From Ramazzottius varieornatus (lineage: Eukaryota > Animalia > Tardigrada): a DNA stretch of 64,000 nucleotides. The position numbers were made by a program, and so were the translations under genes. Below are positions 42,845 through 52,457 of this stretch, piece after piece. The notes below the pieces were generated by a model. That model was not told the DNA's origin and ran no database searches. It saw nothing but the letters and a program-made list of their open reading frames with translations. The DNA is taken from assembly GCA_001949185.1 (NCBI GenBank), contig BDGG01000005.1, positions 3,181,916 through 3,245,915 of the forward strand. The letters are read 5' to 3'. The stretch's first letter is position 1, and each line of letters begins with the position of its first letter.

Positions 42845-45800
42845 ATGCCCGAATCACCCGACACCCCAACCAATGGATCCATCGTCGGAGCTTCCGTCAC
42901 GTCCGTCCAGAAAGAGTACCAGCAAAAGTTCCTTCAACCTGGCAAAGATATTCTAGCCGCTGGCGATGCTGATCGTCAACAGCTGGAACGTCTATTGCAA
43001 CAACATGATCCTAATGTCGCCAAGAAGTTTATCCGGCGCTCTGACTGGGCGCCTAACCACGCATTCCGCGGACAACTGTGGATCAAGCTGTGCAAGCGGT
43101 TGGTGAGCGAGAACGACTGGAACCAATCCATCTCCTTGTACAGAAATACCCTACCGGACATCTACAAGACTTCCGACGGCCAAAGTGCGTGAAACCACTT
43201 CCGTCACTAGCGACAGCCAAACTTTATAGTTGAATTCTCTGTTTTAGCGGAATCCAGCCGAAGCATTCCGACTCCGATGTTCGTCGACGAAACTATGGCC
43301 AAAAGTTACTACCTGAACGAAAATGGGCGCTTTCGCTGTCGGAAAATTCTCACGATGATCGAAGTGAGGACTTTACGTTGAAGAATTCTCTCTTTGCTTA
43401 CAAGAATGATGATATCATAAATATGGAACGTTGCCTCCAATTGACTTTACAAGATCCTTTTCCCAAGCGGCGTACGCTTCCATCTAACAGCACCGACGAC
43501 GTGCGCCAGTTGGGGAAACGATCTATCTCGACAAGATCGCTTACGTAGTGGCGCACGGCTCCAGCCAATAACACTATGGCCGTGCACCACTTGGGAATGC
43601 TCTCTCATCGAGTTTTTCGGCCGACTCCCAGAAAAAGAATTTTCCTGAGATTTTTGAATTCTTATATTGTGTGAATTTTCGATTACTTTATAGACGAGTC
43701 AGCCGCAGATCACCTACGCACCCCTAATTTTCCCTGTCGCCGCTCTCTTCCTCCATTTTATTCCTGACGATGCGGAAGTTTTCGCCTGTCTGGATGCCCT
43801 GCTGCGGCCTAGAAAAGTACCGAAGAAATTCATGACCGATACGGTCCACGCTTGGAAGTCGTCTTCTCATGCGATGGCCGAACTCGTCCGACGAAGACTC
43901 GTAAGAGTAGATATTCTGTTTTTCATTCGAGTTCGAGTTTCATGTCTGCTTTCTGTTGCAGAAAGCGGTGTATAATTCATTGCTGCATTCCCTGGAAGGC
44001 CAAAAGCGCGAGGAGCTTTTCGATAGTTGGCTGAAATGGATTTTCATTGATCTCCCTTTTGAAATTGTGGTAAGGAAGGCATGTGATCATTTGATAATTT
44101 ATGGTCATCAAAATAACACGCCAAGTAATTAATGAGTGTTTTTTTACGGCAGATTCGCGTGATGGACTGCTACCTTTACGAAGGCATCAAAGTTTTATTC
44201 CGCACAGGCCTGGCTCTTCTCAAGATGTTCTACAAGTCCGTTGGTAAGCTCCTCGTTTCACTCTCCTACCCGTCTAGAATTTCACGGTCTCTGGCATATG
44301 TTTGTCACATGATCACGTTGCTCAGTGAAACCTCGAGTCAACACAAACAATGATAACCTGCTTATCTTATCGTCGCGCGCGAAAGAGTAAATAAGCTTTA
44401 TTGTCACTCTGGAAAAAGTATGATGGCGCTTCGCCAAAGTCCGTCAGACACCAGCGAAAAAGAAACTGACAAAAATAATGGAAGCAAAATTACTCGGAAA
44501 AGATTGGGGTAGTGGTGACCGGAAACGACAATATTGATAAACACGAACCAGTTGAAGCTCGGCAAACAAATTTGATCTGACCGTTTTCCTAGGGGGCGCG
44601 TCTTTTCAGTGATAGTGGCTGCCGGTGTGCGCCACTTGTGGAAACGTTCTCGTCGAATTTGATAGTATACCTTTGCCGAAGTTCCGCTTGATATTATTCT
44701 GATTTGTTGTTCTGTTATTTTGAATTCTAGGATCTCCCTATTCGATGCCGAATCTCGCACAAACCCTTCCCCGCTACTGTCAAGATTTTCACAACCACAG
44801 TTCGGCTTCCGAGCTGCTGAAAGTGGGCTTCGGCTTCACGCGCTTGTCACAAGAACAGCTGGTTCGCATGATCCAGGGGTACGAGCAAGATTTGCGCAAG
44901 TCCTCTGACAACCTGCTGACACTACCCGCTGACCGCTCTCGCGAGAAATACGACGAAGCGCGCCGAAGCATCAGCGTGCCGCTTACCACCATTCCAGCGG
45001 AGATTGTGGGCACGAGCCGCATTCTTAGCGAAGATCAGGTACGCCAGTTCATCTGTTGTCTTCTTCGAGAAAAGTGCCGGTAGGAAACCCAAAGGAGATA
45101 TCGGGAAAAAACAGCTTGAGGTTTGGTGAACGAACTCGGCCAGTTCTTTTCTTCGAGTGGCGCGCTTTGTCAGACAGAACAGCTTAATGCATGCGCCACT
45201 CGGCAGTGCCATCTGTTCGAACTTGTTTGGAGGTGAACGTTGTTAATGATGTTGGCTAGAAACATGTACCACTTTGGACAATGATCTGGCAGGGGGTAAG
45301 GAATAGCCAGAAAAGTCCCAATAAAGGTGACAGAAATTTGCAGTACAATTTTGAATTTGTGCTTTCTGAAACGAGGAAAAATAATACGCAGAGTCGCTTA
45401 CAACCAACGAGGACCAGGCCTCACAGCAAGTACTTCCTCGTAGCTCAAGTAGCTGGTCAGGGTCGTGTCACGCGTCGGTCAAGACCACACGTGCTCGCGC
45501 TCTTGATTTCTCAAATCCATTGTTCAATGTATACTCAACGGATTGTTGTTTTCTCGTCTAGTTTTACACTCTATGGCAATGGCTGCCGCTGCGTCATCGG
45601 ATTGCCGAGCCCAAGCTGATCTTCACGTCTGAAGAACACGGCACCAGTCTGCTGACGTTCTTTCAGCAAACGTCGTCGTATGAGCCCACACTACTCTTAA
45701 TCAAGACCCATAAAGATGAAGTCTTCGGAGCGTTCTGTTCTCACAGCTGGGAAAACAGATTCAACGGGGTAATTTTCTTCGTGAAATGGGACCCAGAAAA

Positions 45801-46286: not shown

Positions 46287-48807
46287 GATCAAATTGTGAT
46301 CCAGAGTGGATTTTAATACTAGTCTGTGTGAACTGTACAATGTTGTGATGGACGTTTTGTTCGGATTTTGGCTCCTTTTTGCTCGTTTTCTCTCTGTGTT
46401 TTAGCCAAAGCTTTATCTGCAGTATCTGTGGGAAACCTAGTCGGCAGTTGTTCCTGGATTTTTTTTACGCATTTTTGCTGGGATCTTTAGTTCGCGACTT
46501 TTTCGTGATATGTTTGTTTTGATCTGTGTATGGATACTTTTTTTGTGATTTTTTTGCAGCTGTGCGAGCAGCTCCTTCGGTTCCGTTATTGCTTATAATA
46601 TTGTCTCGTCATTATAACCATTCACCGGTTTTACTTGTCTTAGTTGAGTATGTGCTGCTTTTGCACAATTAGAGCAGCTTCTTTCATCGGAACACTTTTG
46701 CTGTCTTTGTGATCTGTAAACACGAGACAAACCAAAGTCCACCTTCTTCGATCGGGCTGGTAAGGTAGAAACAGTTGTGGTCGCTTATAAAATGAATTCT
46801 TGCAAATCAGCCGTTGGCAAACTGGTGGCGCGCAATGCGCCACAACTGTTTCTTTCTTACCAGCCTGATCGAATCATGTTATAACCGGGAGGTGCGCCAC
46901 TCTAAGGAGCAAGGCTTGTTGCAGCCCACTGGCGCATCTCATACTGCAAAATAACCAACCAATGCGCCACTCAAGCAGATTACATTACGGTGACGCACTT
47001 CAACTGATGTATGGCTCCCCAATTCGCCATCTGACGAGTAACCACTAGAGACTCATTTTCCCTCGATTTATTTTGTCTAAAAAATCAGTAAGTGACAGTG
47101 GATAATAAATAGAATGATTTTGATACCACGTGAGTCTCTGTACGCAAAGCGTGGACAAGGAAGAAGAGCGCAATACAACTAGAAAAGTTTCTCGAAGACC
47201 ACAGTATTGCGAAAGGAAGGTCTGAAAACTACGCCCCAAATTTTTTCCAACCTGAAATTTAATACGTATCACGACTTCACTATCGTACCAGTAAAAACCT
47301 TTGCGCAGAAGTCAAAATCAAGAGGACGTAGTTGCGTCGAACGATCCGGTGGGAGTAGTGGTGGCGTCAGAAGAAGATTCAAGCTTGAGCTTCTTGATGC
47401 GGTGGACGGCACAGCTGCTGGCGTCATCGTCCTCGTGATCTGTCTTGGAGGGAGACAGCTCTGTCTTTTGGGAAGGCAGTCTGTCGCCGGTCGAACCAGC
47501 TTCTTTTTTTAACCGGTCAATCCGCGTCTTGCACTCTCGAAAGAAATACTCCGCGTTCTCTTCCGAACACTACAAACAAAATCCAGTTGCCCCGTCAAAT
47601 CTTCCATTTGCAAGAAAAATCGTAGAAAATGGGAAAAATCAATTTATTTCTTGCTTTCTGCGGTGTGAAAAATCAAAGAAAAGTTGAGATAATCACTTGA
47701 CGAAGGCCAACTTACGGATATGAGGTATATCTTTAGGGTATTGTCGTCTGTTGAGTCGAACGCACAAAATGAGACGTTCTTTTCCGACTGCTTCTTTATG
47801 CTCATTTCCGCCCAGAATTTCGTGTTGGTGATGATACGCAGCGTTCCGGCCATTCTTATCACTGCAAATTCACCCCATCTAAAACCTCAGCCGCACCCAT
47901 TACGTCTTGGATGTGCTGCTGAACACTTACCAAGGCGGGAGTAGGTGCGATCATCAGCATCGTTCAACCGAGCTTGAGCTCTTCCTCGCTCCTTCCAGAC
48001 GTGAAGATCCTTGTCAAAAACGTGCAGCTTGACGTTCATCTGTACGAAACCTCAGGTAAGTTTTTTTTCACTCGCGTTAATTTTTACTTAAGAGTGAGCT
48101 CGGCAAACGAACTCAACCAAGTTCGTTTGCTAAGCGGCGCTTTCCAAGTGGCGCATGTTCTTGGTCAGTAAGACCGGAAACGTGCGCCACCTGGAGAAAA
48201 CAAATCTTATCGAGTTTCTGTGCCGAGCTCTCATGTGCTTACATCAAAGATGTTCTTTTCTTGTTCTTCTCCAGTCGTGACGTTAAACTCTTCGAGCTGT
48301 GGTTTGGCTTGTTTGGCATCATACTCTCTCTTGGCCGACTCTTCCAGTGTTTCTTTCTCTTCTATCGCTCCGAAGACTTCGTTTCCATCCCCATCATCTG
48401 TCTTCTCTCCTTCACCATTCTGTAAACTCTTCGCTGTCGACTCAGTCTTACTCGAAAAGTCGAGTAAAGCTTGAGATGACGAAGGTTTCGTAGAAAATCC
48501 TGCCGGAACTATGGGAGCTTGTTTCAGGGCTTGAGCAAAAAGGAAACCGGACGGCGCGGACGAATTACCAGCTGCGAGACTCCCAAACCCGGCAGACGGT
48601 ATAGAAGCAGTGATGCCGAAACCACCGAATCCCGGACCAATAGGATTCGAGGCGTTCTGTAATAAGATAAGAATTCCAAAAAATATATCGTCCGAATAAA
48701 ACAATTATGGGAACTAGGTCAGCATATTCGACCATTATTAGACCACTGCTCAAAGTGGCGCACCTCTCTGAGCAATAAGACTGAAAACGTGCGCCACTTG
48801 GAAAACC
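43461..48807. repeat. Dispersed intronic/intergenic inverted motif pair (TTCCA)AGTGGCGCA-N26/27-TGCGCCACT(TGG)
   Basis: Units at ~43465-43515, 43547-43594, 44591-44643, 45156-45200, 45823-45873, 46929-46971, 48141-48200 and 48753-48805. Confidence 0.85.
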
Positions 48808-50929
48808 ATCCGCACGAATTTGTCAGCCGACCTCAAACTCAAAAGCTATTTTCAAGTTTCTTACGGCAACTCTTGAGCTAAGGTTTTGTCCGAAGACGAA
48901 GGAGGAAGGTTCGGAAGCGTCACTGCTCTTCCCCGGATCATCTTTGACTTCAGCTACGGAAGTTTCAGGGGTGTCACTGACGATATTCTGCTCGTCCGAT
49001 TCATCGGTCTTCTTCTCTTCGACTGACTTCCGGTCGATGAACTGCCAAGTGTCTATCTCTGGACTTGACTCTTCCTCTTGCCTCTTCGCAGGTTGCATTG
49101 CCAATACTTCGATAGCTTTCTTTTCCGACGTCAGGAAAGGACTTCCCTCGCAGCAGGTATTCAAGCAGGACCAATCCGGACCACGATCGCTCGTTTCCAT
49201 CACCAACTTCTTCCAGTGTTCGTGCGTCTCGTAGAGGACCTTCAGCGCCACATCTCTTCCTTTCGCCTGACCGTCAAAAGCTATTGTGTTTGGTGGCTTT
49301 CCGTCCGGAATCTTGTAGTACCGAAACCAGTCCACGGATTCTTGGATTAAACCTGGCATCTCCTTCTCTACATCGTCGATATCTGCAAGGAGAAGCCCAT
49401 TCAGTTGATTGGGTAACTTGATTAAATCAAAATCACAGAATTTCCCCCGTCCGTAAATAACCCCCGTGTGCACAAGAATTAAACGTCCTGACACCGCTGC
49501 GCTAGTAATAAATATGGTGAGCCGCGCGACGAAAAAGTCCACAGTACTTTTACAGCGGGTACATGCGCGGTGAAATACTTTCTCTGCGCGTCCACTCGCG
49601 GGTATACGGGCGCAGAAACTAGTTTTTCCGCGCATCCATGCGCGGCTTAACTGTTTCTCCGCGCGTGGACGCGGAACAAACTAACTTTATCCGCGGGTAC
49701 ATGCGCGGNNNNNNNNNNNNNNNNNNNNNNNNNNNNNNNNNNNNNNNNNNNNNNNNNNGCGGGTGGAACGCGGATAAAGTATTTCCCCGCGCATGGAGTT
49801 TCTTCGCACATCCACGCGCGGGTAAAACCTATTTATCCGCGCAGCTAAAGTCGAGTATTTCCGCGCGTACGCCTGCGGATAAAGACATTTCACCGCGCGT
49901 GCATGCGCGGATAAAGTCAGTTAATCCGCGCATCCATGCGCGGAAAAACTAGTTCCTCCGCCCGTACACTCGTGGTGAAACTCTCGTCATAGCCCACGGG
50001 TGGATGCGCGGAAAAAGTATTTCACCGCGCATGCACCCGCGGTAAAAGTACTGTGGACTTTTGAATCGCCCGGCTCACCATAAATAAGACTGCAGTGAAT
50101 TTATACCTGCCAACACGGGGTAATAATGTCCTAAGATTTCGAAAAACATTCATACCGTTCAGCGTTGCAGCCAAAGGATCATGAACGTCTATCACGATGA
50201 CTTTCCAGTCCGTTTCACCTTCGTCGCACAACGCAATGACACCTAGAGGTTTCACTTGCAAGACATCGCCTCTCTCGGCTATCCGATGACCAATTTCACA
50301 GACATCCAAGGGATCGCGGTCGCCTTTACAGCCCGTTTCCGGAGAGACATGCTCGGGATCTTCCCACGTCTGGGGAAAAGCGCCGTAGTTCCAGATGTAG
50401 CCCTTGTGCGGGAAAACGTTATGGACAAAGCGTGGCTTGTTCTTCTTGCTGTCTTGCTTGATGGGATTCAGAGGTTCATCGCGGCTAATTTCCATCTTGG
50501 CGTTGGTCCATCGAGGAATTTCAACAACCATGTTGAATATGCCAGTGTTGGCGTTGGCCTCCACCGCTTTACCGTCCTTGTCCACGAAGAGAGGGATGTC
50601 ATGGAAGGGAGAAATGGGCATCTGGTCTTGCATAAGGAACAACCGATAGTCTTCATGGTATAGTCCACCAAACTCTGCCTTCTGATATTGTGCCATGGCC
50701 AAGCTGGATAAATCACGCACGCTTCTGTTGATTGTTGACGGCACAACTGATCTTAGATGTGCGATTCCACTCAGAAGTTGATCAGAACGTGCTCGCGCCC
50801 GCCTTACAGGCTCTGGATCGGAATGCCTTTTCGCTTCCACGAGTAAAGCTGAATTGAAAGATACCCCCAATAACCAGTAGTTAAAATACACCAGTCCCTA
50901 CGTTTGGGAACGGCAAGAAGGAAGATCAT
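47318..50929 (-). CDS. PPA/RANBP3: Fusion gene: family I inorganic pyrophosphatase followed by RanBP3-like FG region and Ran-binding domain; exons 50929-50902, 50848-50156, 49382-48865, 48656-48243, 48039-47931, 47861-47716, 47569-47318
   Basis: PPase: [66 protein letters not shown]. Same exon continues without a stop to [13 protein letters not shown]. Later exons: FG repeats, [20 protein letters not shown]...[30 protein letters not shown]. All splice phases are compatible. Confidence 0.85.
49514..50082. mobile_element. Foldback/MITE-like insertion with internal CCGCGC...GCGCGG repeats in the PPase intron (contains an assembly gap)
   Basis: ATGGTGAGCCG...AAAAGTCCACAGTACTTTTAC mirrored by GTAAAAGTACTGTGGACTTTT...CGGCTCACCAT; many ~35-40-bp palindromic sub-units. 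Confidence 0.75.
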
Positions 50930-51064
50930 GGATGGAGACAATCCGAGTTGTGAAATTAAAGTGTCTTGCTACCACACGGCCTGCCACAAAGCGTGACCTG
51001 CAGTGGCAAGCCGAACGTGCAACAAAGACCGTCAACGGCTTTTCTTGCTGCCTGACCGCTCCAT

Positions 51065-51240
51065 TAGACCTGGCAAAAGTGTGATAAGTGTGGTGTGGTG
51101 TTTTTCGGTTTGGTGTGATGTAGTGTCCTAGGACACCGAATCCGAAAATTCGGTGTGAAACAGACACCACTTTTTTCGATTTGGTGTTTTCCGCATACCG
51201 AAACCAAAAAGTGTGGTTTTTTTTCGTGTGGCCAAATCTA
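51065..51240. mobile_element. 176-bp hAT-type MITE with 8-bp TSD CGCTCCAT, ~135 bp upstream of the first PPase ATG
   Basis: TAGACCTGGC...GGCCAAATCTA ends; CGCTCCAT at 51057-51064 and 51241-51248; internal GGTGT/ACACC repeats. Confidence 0.85.
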
Positions 51241-51415
51241 CGCTCCATGACGAGTTCTCAACTATTATTTTATTAAGAGCTGCTACACAGGAGTTTGGCA
51301 GAATGGAAACGAAGACAGAAACTTCCCGGATAACTGATCTCGGAGATCTGGTGCCGGGATTTTTCGGTTGGTGATAGTATTTCTTGTTGAGAAAGCTCAT
51401 TAGTTGCAACGTGCA

Positions 51416-52457
51416 TTATTCAGGAGCCTTCGTAGTCCCCTTCGTGATGGGTTCGGAACCGGTGTTGTTACTCCTCGACGGAACATCGGCCATGCGTCGG
51501 TTGCTGGGAAAGAATGAGGCTGGTGGAAAACCTATTGAGTTTGCGGCAGGTCCCGTGGCACTTCCTAGCCCGTACCCACCGTTAGTGTAACTGAGGCCGT
51601 TGCTGGTAGGTGACGATGGATTGACCGTGTCGATGACGGTAGTTTCCGGTGTGTGGCAGATGTTTCCGCATCCGTTGTTGCAACAGATCTGTCCCGCACC
51701 ACAGTCCTGACTCCGTTGACATTTATCTGGACAAACTATGGTGGAAGCGAGACCTCCACGTACCCGGTCGTTGGCGGTGCCGACTGGAACTTTGTAAACC
51801 AGCTCATCAAAACAACGACCAACTACCAACGAAAGCAGAAGTAAACGTTCGGAACTTGAAGATATCGGTCTTGAGAGCCTAACTTGGTACTTGTCAATAC
51901 CTTTGGTTCCGGTTGGTTGCACCAGTGGACTGTTGAAATTCATTCGACGGCATCTGTAGCTACCACCTTGTTGATCAAACGACGTAAAGCTCAGTGGTTC
52001 GCAGTATCTTCCGGGTCCGCAGTTTATAGCCTGAAAAGTGAACGAGTTGGAACATGTACATGAGAGAGAAATTTGAATCATAATACGATCAGTTCATCAT
52101 AGACGGTACCATGCATGGGTCGCGGATTCCAGTGGTGTATGGATTTGAGGGGCTCATTGGGTAAGGTGAATATGGTGAGCCGCTTGATGGATAGATCGGG
52201 TTGACGCTGCCGTAAACGGATGGATAAGTGCTGTAGGGATTTCCGATTAGTCCAGAACCTGTGGGGTAACCAACGGCAGAACCCGTAATTAAGTTCGACG
52301 AAAATGGGTGTGGCTGATAGGCGCTCGTGGGGTGTCCATGTCCGCAGCAGCTGCTACCGTATGGCAAACCATCTGCACTGTAGAACGACTGACCGGAAAC
52401 GGCACAGATGAGCCCTGATAGCAGGCCCATAATCGAAAAACACAAGGTAGCTCCCAT
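51416..52457 (-). CDS. Secreted protein: Y/P/S/G-rich region, small Cys module and one WAP four-disulfide-core domain; exons 52457-52110, 52030-51901, 51822-51416
   Basis: Signal peptide MGATLCFSIMGLLSGLICAVSG; DPCMAINCGPGRYC; spliced KVGRC-x26-CPDKCQRSQDCGAGQICCNNGCGNIC with all 8 WAP cysteines. Confidence 0.8.

What the first reader, a model, noticed from the sequence alone, without database searches (positions are those of the whole stretch)
47318..50929. Inorganic pyrophosphatase fused in frame to a RanBP3-like nuclear export cofactor
Seen: exon 49382-48865 carries the end of a family I PPase ([11 protein letters not shown]...EIDTWQFI, where PPases normally end) and continues with no stop or intron through an acidic linker into [13 protein letters not shown]. 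Phase-compatible exons then give FG repeats, a complete Ran-binding domain and a basic HRIKKLKL patch. Known: FVFGQN plus LEESA...TGEE-RanBD is the RanBP3 signature (CRM1/RanGTP cofactor); PPase and RanBP3 are normally separate genes; Drosophila NURF-38 is a chromatin-associated PPase. Inference: a chimera that could tether PPi hydrolysis to the nucleus or the Ran/CRM1 export machinery. I am not aware of this architecture being described.
Basis: partly seen in the sequence, partly recalled or inferred. Interest (0 to 1): 0.85.

Follow-up and report, generated by a model that had tools for sequence, protein, structure and literature searches.

The report
Pyrophosphatase fused to RanBP3 gene

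Summary
A six-exon gene on the minus strand (50696..47318, 1980 nt, 659 codons, all introns GT..AG) encodes a full family I pyrophosphatase (PPase) in exon 1 and the first 116 codons of exon 2. It continues in the same exon, with no stop, through a 45-residue acidic linker into [14 protein letters not shown] repeats, a RanBP3-type Ran-binding domain and a basic tail follow.

The N gap lies inside intron 1, at the inner edge of a foldback repeat. That intron is ancestral (same site and phase in two other PPase genes), and yeast PPase numbering runs 169 / D170 / 171 across it, so the gap does not affect the frame.

The genome is R. varieornatus. It has two further stand-alone PPases and no second RanBP3. 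The PPase part keeps all 13 catalytic residues and evolves under constraint (dN/dS 0.15-0.25).

Paramacrobiotus metropolitanus has an unfused 375-aa RanBP3 with its own start, so the fusion is derived and lineage-restricted. No protein with both a PPase and a RanBD domain appeared among the best hits of two large searches.

Verdict: the fused ORF in the DNA is real; a fused protein is likely (about 0.6); the proposed function is speculative.

The parts
50156..50696 (-). Exon 1: start codon at 50696 and PPase residues 1-180 (active-site motifs [46 protein letters not shown]); ends in phase 1
49383..50155 (-). Intron 1 (773 nt as assembled, GT..AG). This is an ancestral PPase intron position (LN|D, split G|AT)
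49504..50091 (.). Foldback repeat element filling intron 1: nested inverted arms built of ~31-nt CCGCGCATG..GCGCGG units
49709..49758 (.). Assembly gap (N), at the inner edge of the foldback element and entirely intronic
49033..49382 (-). Exon 2, PPase part: C-terminal third of the PPase ([12 protein letters not shown] ... EIDTWQFID), aligned to the natural C-termini of solved PPases
48865..49032 (-). Exon 2, RanBP3 part: acidic linker ([15 protein letters not shown]...SSDASEPSS) plus the [12 protein letters not shown] motif, in the same exon and frame. The last 33 residues align to P. metropolitanus RanBP3-like residues 69-98
48243..48656 (-). Exon 3: FG-rich segment (GFGGFG, GFGSL, GFLFAQ) and the LEESAKREY...[13 protein letters not shown] bridge to the RanBD
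47931..48039 (-). Exon 4: first strands of the RanBD ([27 protein letters not shown]...)
47716..47861 (-). Exon 5: core of the RanBD; among solved structures it hits only RanBP3
47318..47569 (-). Exon 6: last RanBD helix, Ser/Thr-acidic tail, basic HRIKKLKL patch and TGA stop at 47320-47318. An ATTAAA lies 55 nt downstream (47263)
49096..49098 (-). In-frame ATG (Met95 of exon 2, MQPAKRQ). This is a derived residue (K or R in other tardigrade PPases) and a candidate internal start for a RanBP3-only isoform
   Evidence: inference

Best explanation
This is a lineage-specific gene fusion. An intron-poor duplicate of the tardigrade family I PPase came to lie directly upstream of RanBP3 on the same strand. 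The PPase stop codon, the spacer and the RanBP3 start region were then lost. The locus now encodes one 659-residue protein: an active, presumably dimeric PPase, a ~45-residue acidic linker, the FVFGQN/FG segment, a RanBP3-type RanBD and a C-terminal basic patch. Shown here: the continuous ORF, the completeness and constraint of both halves, the single-copy status of RanBP3, and the unfused state in Paramacrobiotus. Inferred: the fused mRNA and protein is the main product; the RanBP3 half still acts as the nuclear RanGTP/CRM1 cofactor; and it carries a PPi-hydrolysing, dimerising module with it into the nucleus.
For: (1) One open exon joins the natural PPase C-terminus to [12 protein letters not shown]. 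There is no stop, no in-frame ATG in the linker, and no AATAAA or ATTAAA anywhere between the PPase end and the last intron. (2) All splice sites are canonical and phase-compatible, giving a 1980-nt CDS. (3) The P. metropolitanus RanBP3-like protein aligns colinearly to the exon-2 tail and to exons 3, 4+5 and 6. It reads straight across the exon 2/3 junction (..FGQNLNSRV-TNAASGP.. against ..[10 protein letters not shown]|NASNP..). So FVFGQN belongs to the RanBP3 coding sequence, and its own ATG, 85 codons upstream in P. metropolitanus, has no counterpart here. (4) RanBP3 is single-copy: exons 3 and 5 and P0280 match only this locus; the other RanBD genes are RanBP1/2-like, Nup50-like (RvY_05694) and PP4R3-like. 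(5) The PPase half is intact. All 13 yeast-PPase active-site residues are present (direct reading). Against the stand-alone paralogue, dN/dS is 0.25 in exon 1 and 0.15 in exon 2, with dS about 1.8 in exon 2, which means long independent evolution under constraint. (6) The gap is intronic, at an intron position shared with two other PPase genes.
Against: No annotated R. varieornatus protein for this locus, fused or not, appeared in the protein databases within the length ranges searched, so the depositors' gene model is unknown. The fusion is not conserved in P. metropolitanus, so there is no cross-species proof that it is maintained. Exon 1 is 94% identical at nucleotide level to the paralogue, so gene conversion could help keep that part intact. 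A derived in-frame Met (Met95 of exon 2) could serve a RanBP3-only isoform.
Confidence: 0.6

Rival explanations
1. The locus holds two overlapping expression units. An upstream promoter gives a PPase message that ends early, for example by retaining intron 2, which adds [13 protein letters not shown] and a stop. An internal promoter, in the intron-1 foldback element or in exon 2, gives a RanBP3-only message translated from Met95 (MQPAKRQ...) or Met61. The full fusion would then be minor or absent.
For: Met95 is derived: the residue is K in the stand-alone paralogue and in P. metropolitanus, and R in RvY_18979. It sits 66 codons before FVFGQN, close to the 85 codons in P. metropolitanus, and has a G at -3. 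Reading into intron 2 reaches a stop after 13 codons. The ancestral state is two separate genes.
Against: No poly(A) signal lies between the PPase end and intron 5. Any transcript from the PPase start that is spliced normally must read into RanBP3. No promoter or transcription-start evidence is available. A RanBP3 started at Met95 would still carry 21 PPase-derived residues.
Confidence: 0.25
2. It is an assembly or sequencing artefact: a collapsed deletion or a base error in exon 2 hides the PPase stop codon and the boundary between two adjacent genes.
For: The locus holds an assembly gap and a foldback repeat 330 nt upstream of the junction region. Raw reads could not be examined.
Against: The gap is in intron 1, not near the junction. 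The junction exon is 518 nt of unique sequence without homopolymer runs. A single error would have to restore both the frame and stop-free reading over 57 codons. No remnant of a RanBP3 start or of the N-terminal basic region was found elsewhere in the window or genome.
Confidence: 0.05
3. The PPase half is a dead leader: a decaying duplicate that now only supplies the promoter, 5' sequence and start codon for RanBP3, with no catalytic role.
For: Two other PPase genes exist, so this copy is dispensable as an enzyme. Exon 1 may be kept intact by gene conversion from the paralogue.
Against: All catalytic residues are kept. The exon-2 PPase part shows dN/dS 0.15 at dS about 1.8 with no sign of recent conversion. 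There are no frameshifts or stops in 296 codons.
Confidence: 0.1

Closest known systems
RanBP3 (human RANBP3; yeast Yrb2; 'ran-binding protein 3-like' of Paramacrobiotus metropolitanus, P0280)
   Same: It has the FVFGQN/FxFG motif, FG-rich spacer, ESA...TGEE bridge and a RanBP3-subtype RanBD. Exon 5 hits only 2y8f, 2y8g and 2crf. It is colinear with P0280, single-copy in the genome, and has a C-terminal basic patch as P0280 does.
   Different: The N-terminus is replaced. P0280 has 85 residues with a basic RRRERDR...RERRRDD cluster; here there is a whole 296-residue PPase plus an acidic linker, and no start codon of RanBP3's own.
Eukaryotic family I soluble inorganic pyrophosphatase (yeast IPP1, human PPA1/PPA2, S. 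japonicum 4qlz)
   Same: It is full length and aligns end to end. PF00719 scores above the cut-off. All active-site residues are present, including the C-terminal W-x-F-I motif.
   Different: There is no stop after the C-terminal motif; 363 further residues follow. D-R-D-P-L-D replaces the usual D-[SGDN]-D-P, a change shared with the stand-alone paralogue.
Stand-alone paralogue in the same genome (G000:C5:3158196-3159276, L004/L015) and RvY_18979 (C22)
   Same: The paralogue has the same single intron at the same phase, 89% amino-acid identity in exon 1 and 64% in exon 2. It forms a clade with the fused copy inside the tardigrade PPases.
   Different: The paralogue ends TWHFIDREAAENSVARK-stop, has an upstream leader, and is followed by a DPM1-like gene rather than RanBP3.
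Drosophila NURF-38 (a PPase that is a subunit of the NURF chromatin remodeller; from my own knowledge, Gdula et al. 1998)
   Same: It is a precedent for a family I PPase working inside the nucleus attached to other machinery.
   Different: NURF-38 is a separate polypeptide that joins a complex non-covalently. Here the link is covalent, and the partner is a transport cofactor.
Other PPase fusions seen here
   Same: PPase joined to another module in one predicted protein: PPase+Arf GTPase (P0057), PPase+thiamin pyrophosphokinase (P0097), and tandem PPases (P0001, P0160, P0162, P0166).
   Different: None carries a RanBD. Their reality is also unverified, as they are database predictions.

Membership tests
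Family I inorganic pyrophosphatase (PF00719) | Profile match over the curated cut-off covering the whole domain | tested here: met
   Exon 1: 120 bits, profile positions 1-99. Exon 2: 24.2 bits (cut-off 23.5), positions 104-153. Genome scan: 121.7 and 25.8 bits.
Family I inorganic pyrophosphatase (PF00719) | The 13 active-site residues of yeast PPase (E48 K56 E58 R78 Y93 D115 D117 D120 D147 D152 K154 Y192 K193) | tested here: met
   Alignment to yeast and S. japonicum chains, read directly: [46 protein letters not shown].
Family I inorganic pyrophosphatase (PF00719) | Mg2+-dependent PPi hydrolysis | not testable with these tools
   Needs an enzyme assay.
RanBP3 / Yrb2 family | C-terminal RanBD of the RanBP3 subtype | tested here: met
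Exon 5 hits only RanBP3 RanBD structures (6.7e-10). Exon 4 hits RanBP3 at 1e-3 and PF00638 at 19 bits, below the cut-off because the domain is split over 3 exons.
RanBP3 / Yrb2 family | FxFG/FVFGQN motifs and the ESA..TGEE bridge N-terminal to the RanBD | tested here: met
   Read directly and aligned to P0280.
RanBP3 / Yrb2 family | Orthology: a named RanBP3 finds this locus as its only match in the genome | tested here: met
   P0280 matches only C5:3229616-3230565, which is this locus, plus a weak RanBP1/2-like hit at E 0.01.
RanBP3 / Yrb2 family | N-terminal basic NLS region | tested here: not met
   The linker after TWQFI is acidic, with no basic cluster. P0280 has one. Only the C-terminal HRIKKLKL patch remains.
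RanBP3 / Yrb2 family | Binding to CRM1 and RanGTP | not testable with these tools
   Needs binding assays. No complex prediction was run, because the spliced model may not be joined.
Expressed gene fusion (single transcription unit) | Continuous ORF with no stop, start or poly(A) signal at the junction | tested here: met
Expressed gene fusion (single transcription unit) | Transcript or peptide spanning the junction | not testable with these tools
Expressed gene fusion (single transcription unit) | Fusion conserved in related species | tested here: not met
   The P. metropolitanus RanBP3-like protein is unfused at 375 aa. No C5-type or fused PPase from other species appeared among the best 120 hits. 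Hypsibius and other Ramazzottius species could not be examined.

The most novel reading that the evidence does not exclude
The only RanBP3 of R. varieornatus is made solely as a covalent fusion to an active, dimeric PPase. The CRM1/RanGTP export cofactor of this extremotolerant animal would then be obligatorily dimeric and would carry PPi hydrolysis into the nucleus. This domain architecture is not seen in any other organism searched, and it arose after the split from Macrobiotoidea.
Probability: 0.45. Interest if true: 0.55.

Novelty: new variant of a known kind. Interest (0 to 1): 0.4.

Why it matters
If the fused protein is the real product, it is a natural experiment in which a nuclear-transport cofactor lost its own N-terminus, including its NLS region, and gained a dimeric housekeeping enzyme. 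That would bear on how RanBP3 is imported and how many copies of it act on CRM1. It would also bear on whether nuclear PPi removal, a by-product of DNA and RNA synthesis and repair, is worth tethering to nuclear machinery, as with the Drosophila NURF-38 precedent. It is also a clean, datable case of fusion by loss of a stop codon and spacer next to an intron-poor duplicate. The limits are real: it is lineage-restricted, both parts are well-known families, two ordinary PPases remain in the genome, and expression is unproven.

Tried and rejected
Reads:
- I re-sent an N-free stretch once, as a correction of a possible slip.

Protein searches:
- The search of protein representatives with exon 2: the best 150 hits were all PPases. 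The long ones checked were tandem PPases, low-complexity tails, PPase+Arf or PPase+TPK. None had a RanBD.
- The search for homologous proteins with exon 2 (candidates 95-301 aa): nothing close.
- With a PPase profile led by a 439-aa protein (A1, 241-768 aa): no PF00638 co-occurrence in the best 120, and no protein from this locus or from the paralogue.
- With a Nup50-like plus RanBP3-exon profile (A2, 173-551 aa): found the unfused P. metropolitanus RanBP3, but no R. varieornatus model.

These searches show only the best hits within length limits, so they do not prove the architecture is absent elsewhere.

Other searches that gave nothing:
- The metagenome scan found only distant PPases.
- ESM Atlas had nothing useful.
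- Paper searches and supplement searches of four tardigrade papers mention neither gene.

Left out on purpose: under the operators' rule, the spliced 659-aa model was never joined for a search, a fold or a complex prediction; all searches were exon by exon, by reference.

Considered and rejected:
- The 'EKKA..MQPA' similarity between the P. metropolitanus RanBP3 N-terminus and exon 2 is not homology. That stretch aligns gap-free to the PPase tails of other tardigrades.
- A hidden exon in the N gap is unlikely, because the flanks are mirror-image repeat arms.
Full report
**What is there**

Reading the minus strand of 47000-51500 gives a six-exon gene:
- exon 1: 50696-50156
- exon 2: 49382-48865
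- exon 3: 48656-48243
- exon 4: 48039-47931
- exon 5: 47861-47716
- exon 6: 47569-47318

A script confirmed that every intron is GT..AG, that the phases fit, and that the coding length is 1980 nt, which is 659 codons plus TGA.

Pfam places PF00719 on exon 1 (8e-35, profile positions 1-99) and exon 2 (3e-5, positions 104-153). Solved PPases align to exon 1 up to yeast residue 169. They align to exon 2 from residue 171 to within three residues of their own C-termini. The missing residue 170 is the Asp of the split codon G|AT.

All 13 catalytic residues of yeast PPase are present (direct reading).

After ...EIDTWQFID, where PPases end, the same exon runs on for 56 codons. These are an acidic linker and [12 protein letters not shown], up to a GTAAG donor. 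The other two frames of this tail contain stops. The chance of 57 open codons at this composition is about 0.05, before requiring the right frame.

**The gap**

The N run 49709-49758 lies inside intron 1 (50155-49383). It sits at the inner edge of a foldback element made of nested inverted arms and ~31-nt units.

The intron position and phase (LN|D, G|AT) are identical in the stand-alone paralogue and in the multi-exon C22 PPase gene. The PPase alignment is unbroken across it. The gap therefore does not affect the frame or the continuity of the coding sequence. Its true length is unknown.

**The RanBP3 half**

Exon 5 hits only human RanBP3 RanBD structures (6.7e-10). Exon 4 hits RanBP3 and RanBP2 RanBDs (about 1e-3).

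A profile search recovered 'ran-binding protein 3-like' of Paramacrobiotus metropolitanus (P0280, 375 aa). It aligns colinearly to the exon-2 tail (FIFGQNLNSRV against [11 protein letters not shown]) and to exons 3, 4+5 and 6. It reads straight through the exon 2/3 junction.

So the FVFGQN motif that shares an exon with the PPase C-terminus is genuine RanBP3 coding sequence. P0280 has its own start and an 85-residue N-terminus with a basic cluster. Neither has a counterpart here.

**Genome context**

The assembly has 55.8 Mb in 200 contigs. It carries RvY_18979 at 99% identity on C22, so it is Ramazzottius varieornatus.

It has three PPase genes:
- RvY_18979, with at least 10 exons.
- A stand-alone copy 73 kb away on the same contig. 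It ends TWHFIDREAAENSVARK-stop and is followed by a DPM1-like gene.
- The fused copy.

The two C5 copies share the single retained intron and form a clade inside the tardigrade PPases. They are 94% identical at nucleotide level over 496 nt of exon 1, but only 81% over the first 257 nt of exon 2, after which similarity ends.

dN/dS is 0.25 in exon 1 and 0.15 in exon 2, with dS about 1.8 in exon 2. The PPase half has therefore evolved under constraint.

RanBP3 is single-copy. The other RanBD loci are RanBP1/2-like, Nup50-like and PP4R3-like.

**Most likely origin and function**

The simplest history has three steps:
1. An intron-poor PPase duplicate sat upstream of RanBP3 on the same strand.
2. 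Its stop codon, the spacer and the RanBP3 start region were lost.
3. One ORF resulted.

There is no in-frame ATG in the linker. No AATAAA or ATTAAA lies between the PPase end and intron 5. Any normally spliced transcript that starts at the PPase promoter must therefore encode the fusion.

I infer a dimeric protein (family I eukaryotic PPases are dimers, from established knowledge) that is imported through the C-terminal basic patch. It would act as the RanGTP/CRM1 cofactor while carrying an active PPase. None of this function is shown.

**Rivals**

- Two overlapping expression units, with a RanBP3-only isoform starting at the derived Met95 of exon 2 (0.25).
- A dead PPase leader (0.1).
- An assembly error (0.05).

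The confidence values for the best explanation and the three rivals sum to 1.0. Separating them needs RNA or raw reads.

**What could not be done**

- No annotated protein from this locus appeared in the databases within the length ranges reachable.
- A close relative exists in ENA data: P0279 is 77% identical to exon 6. Its junction exon could not be fetched.

**Novelty**

No protein combining PF00719 with PF00638 appeared among the best hits of two large searches, and no paper mentions it. These searches are not exhaustive.

Both halves are well-known families, and the fusion is absent from P. metropolitanus. I rate it a new variant of a known kind, of moderate interest, pending transcript proof.

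Noticed in passing
window 49504-50091: Intron 1 is filled by a foldback element with nested inverted arms (99 nt at 85%, 55 nt at 87%, 55 nt at 71%). It is built of ~31-nt units around CCGCGCATG..ATGCGCGG. The assembly gap sits at its inner edge, which probably explains why the assembly broke there.
   Followed up: partly
window 48797-48754 and 48190-48148: Introns 2 and 3 each carry a GTGGCGCACG ... GCGCCAC inverted pair about 23 nt apart. This is the same hairpin motif that earlier notes s1-809015 and s1-809016 report in neighbouring introns.
   Followed up: no
G000:C5:3158196-3159276 (L004/L015), window 50696-48865, G000:C22:216337-218535 (L016): The two C5 PPase copies keep only one intron, at the same site and phase as one intron of the >=10-exon C22 gene. 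This fits intron loss through a partly processed retrocopy. Exon 1 of the pair is 94% identical at nucleotide level against 81% in exon 2, which suggests a gene-conversion tract.
   Followed up: partly
window 50929-50848: A possible upstream mini-exon (ATG at 50929, donor at 50901, 52-nt intron, acceptor before 50848) is phase-compatible. It would add an Arg/Ser-rich leader of about 64 residues ahead of the Met at 50696. It is unverified, and a targeting leader would sit oddly on a RanBP3 fusion.
   Followed up: no
window 49096-49098: Met95 of exon 2 is a derived residue: K in the stand-alone paralogue and in P. metropolitanus, R in RvY_18979. It is a single-base change that creates an in-frame ATG 66 codons before FVFGQN.
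   Followed up: partly
window 51416-52457 (minus strand): The upstream neighbour looks like a secreted Cys-rich protein with a WAP-like CPDKCQRSQDCGAGQICCNNGCGNICH motif. The downstream neighbour, on the plus strand around 42845-45100, converges on the 3' end of the fused gene.
   Followed up: no
P0057, P0097, P0001, P0160, P0162, P0166: Other predicted PPase fusions exist in public data: PPase+Arf GTPase, PPase+thiamin pyrophosphokinase, and several tandem double PPases, including one in Hydra vulgaris.
   Followed up: partly
P0279, P0278 (ENA): ENA assemblies hold short contigs from a close relative of R. varieornatus. P0279 is 77% identical to exon 6 of this gene, and P0278 is 70% identical to the Nup50-like RvY_05694. 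Its junction exon would date the fusion.
   Followed up: no
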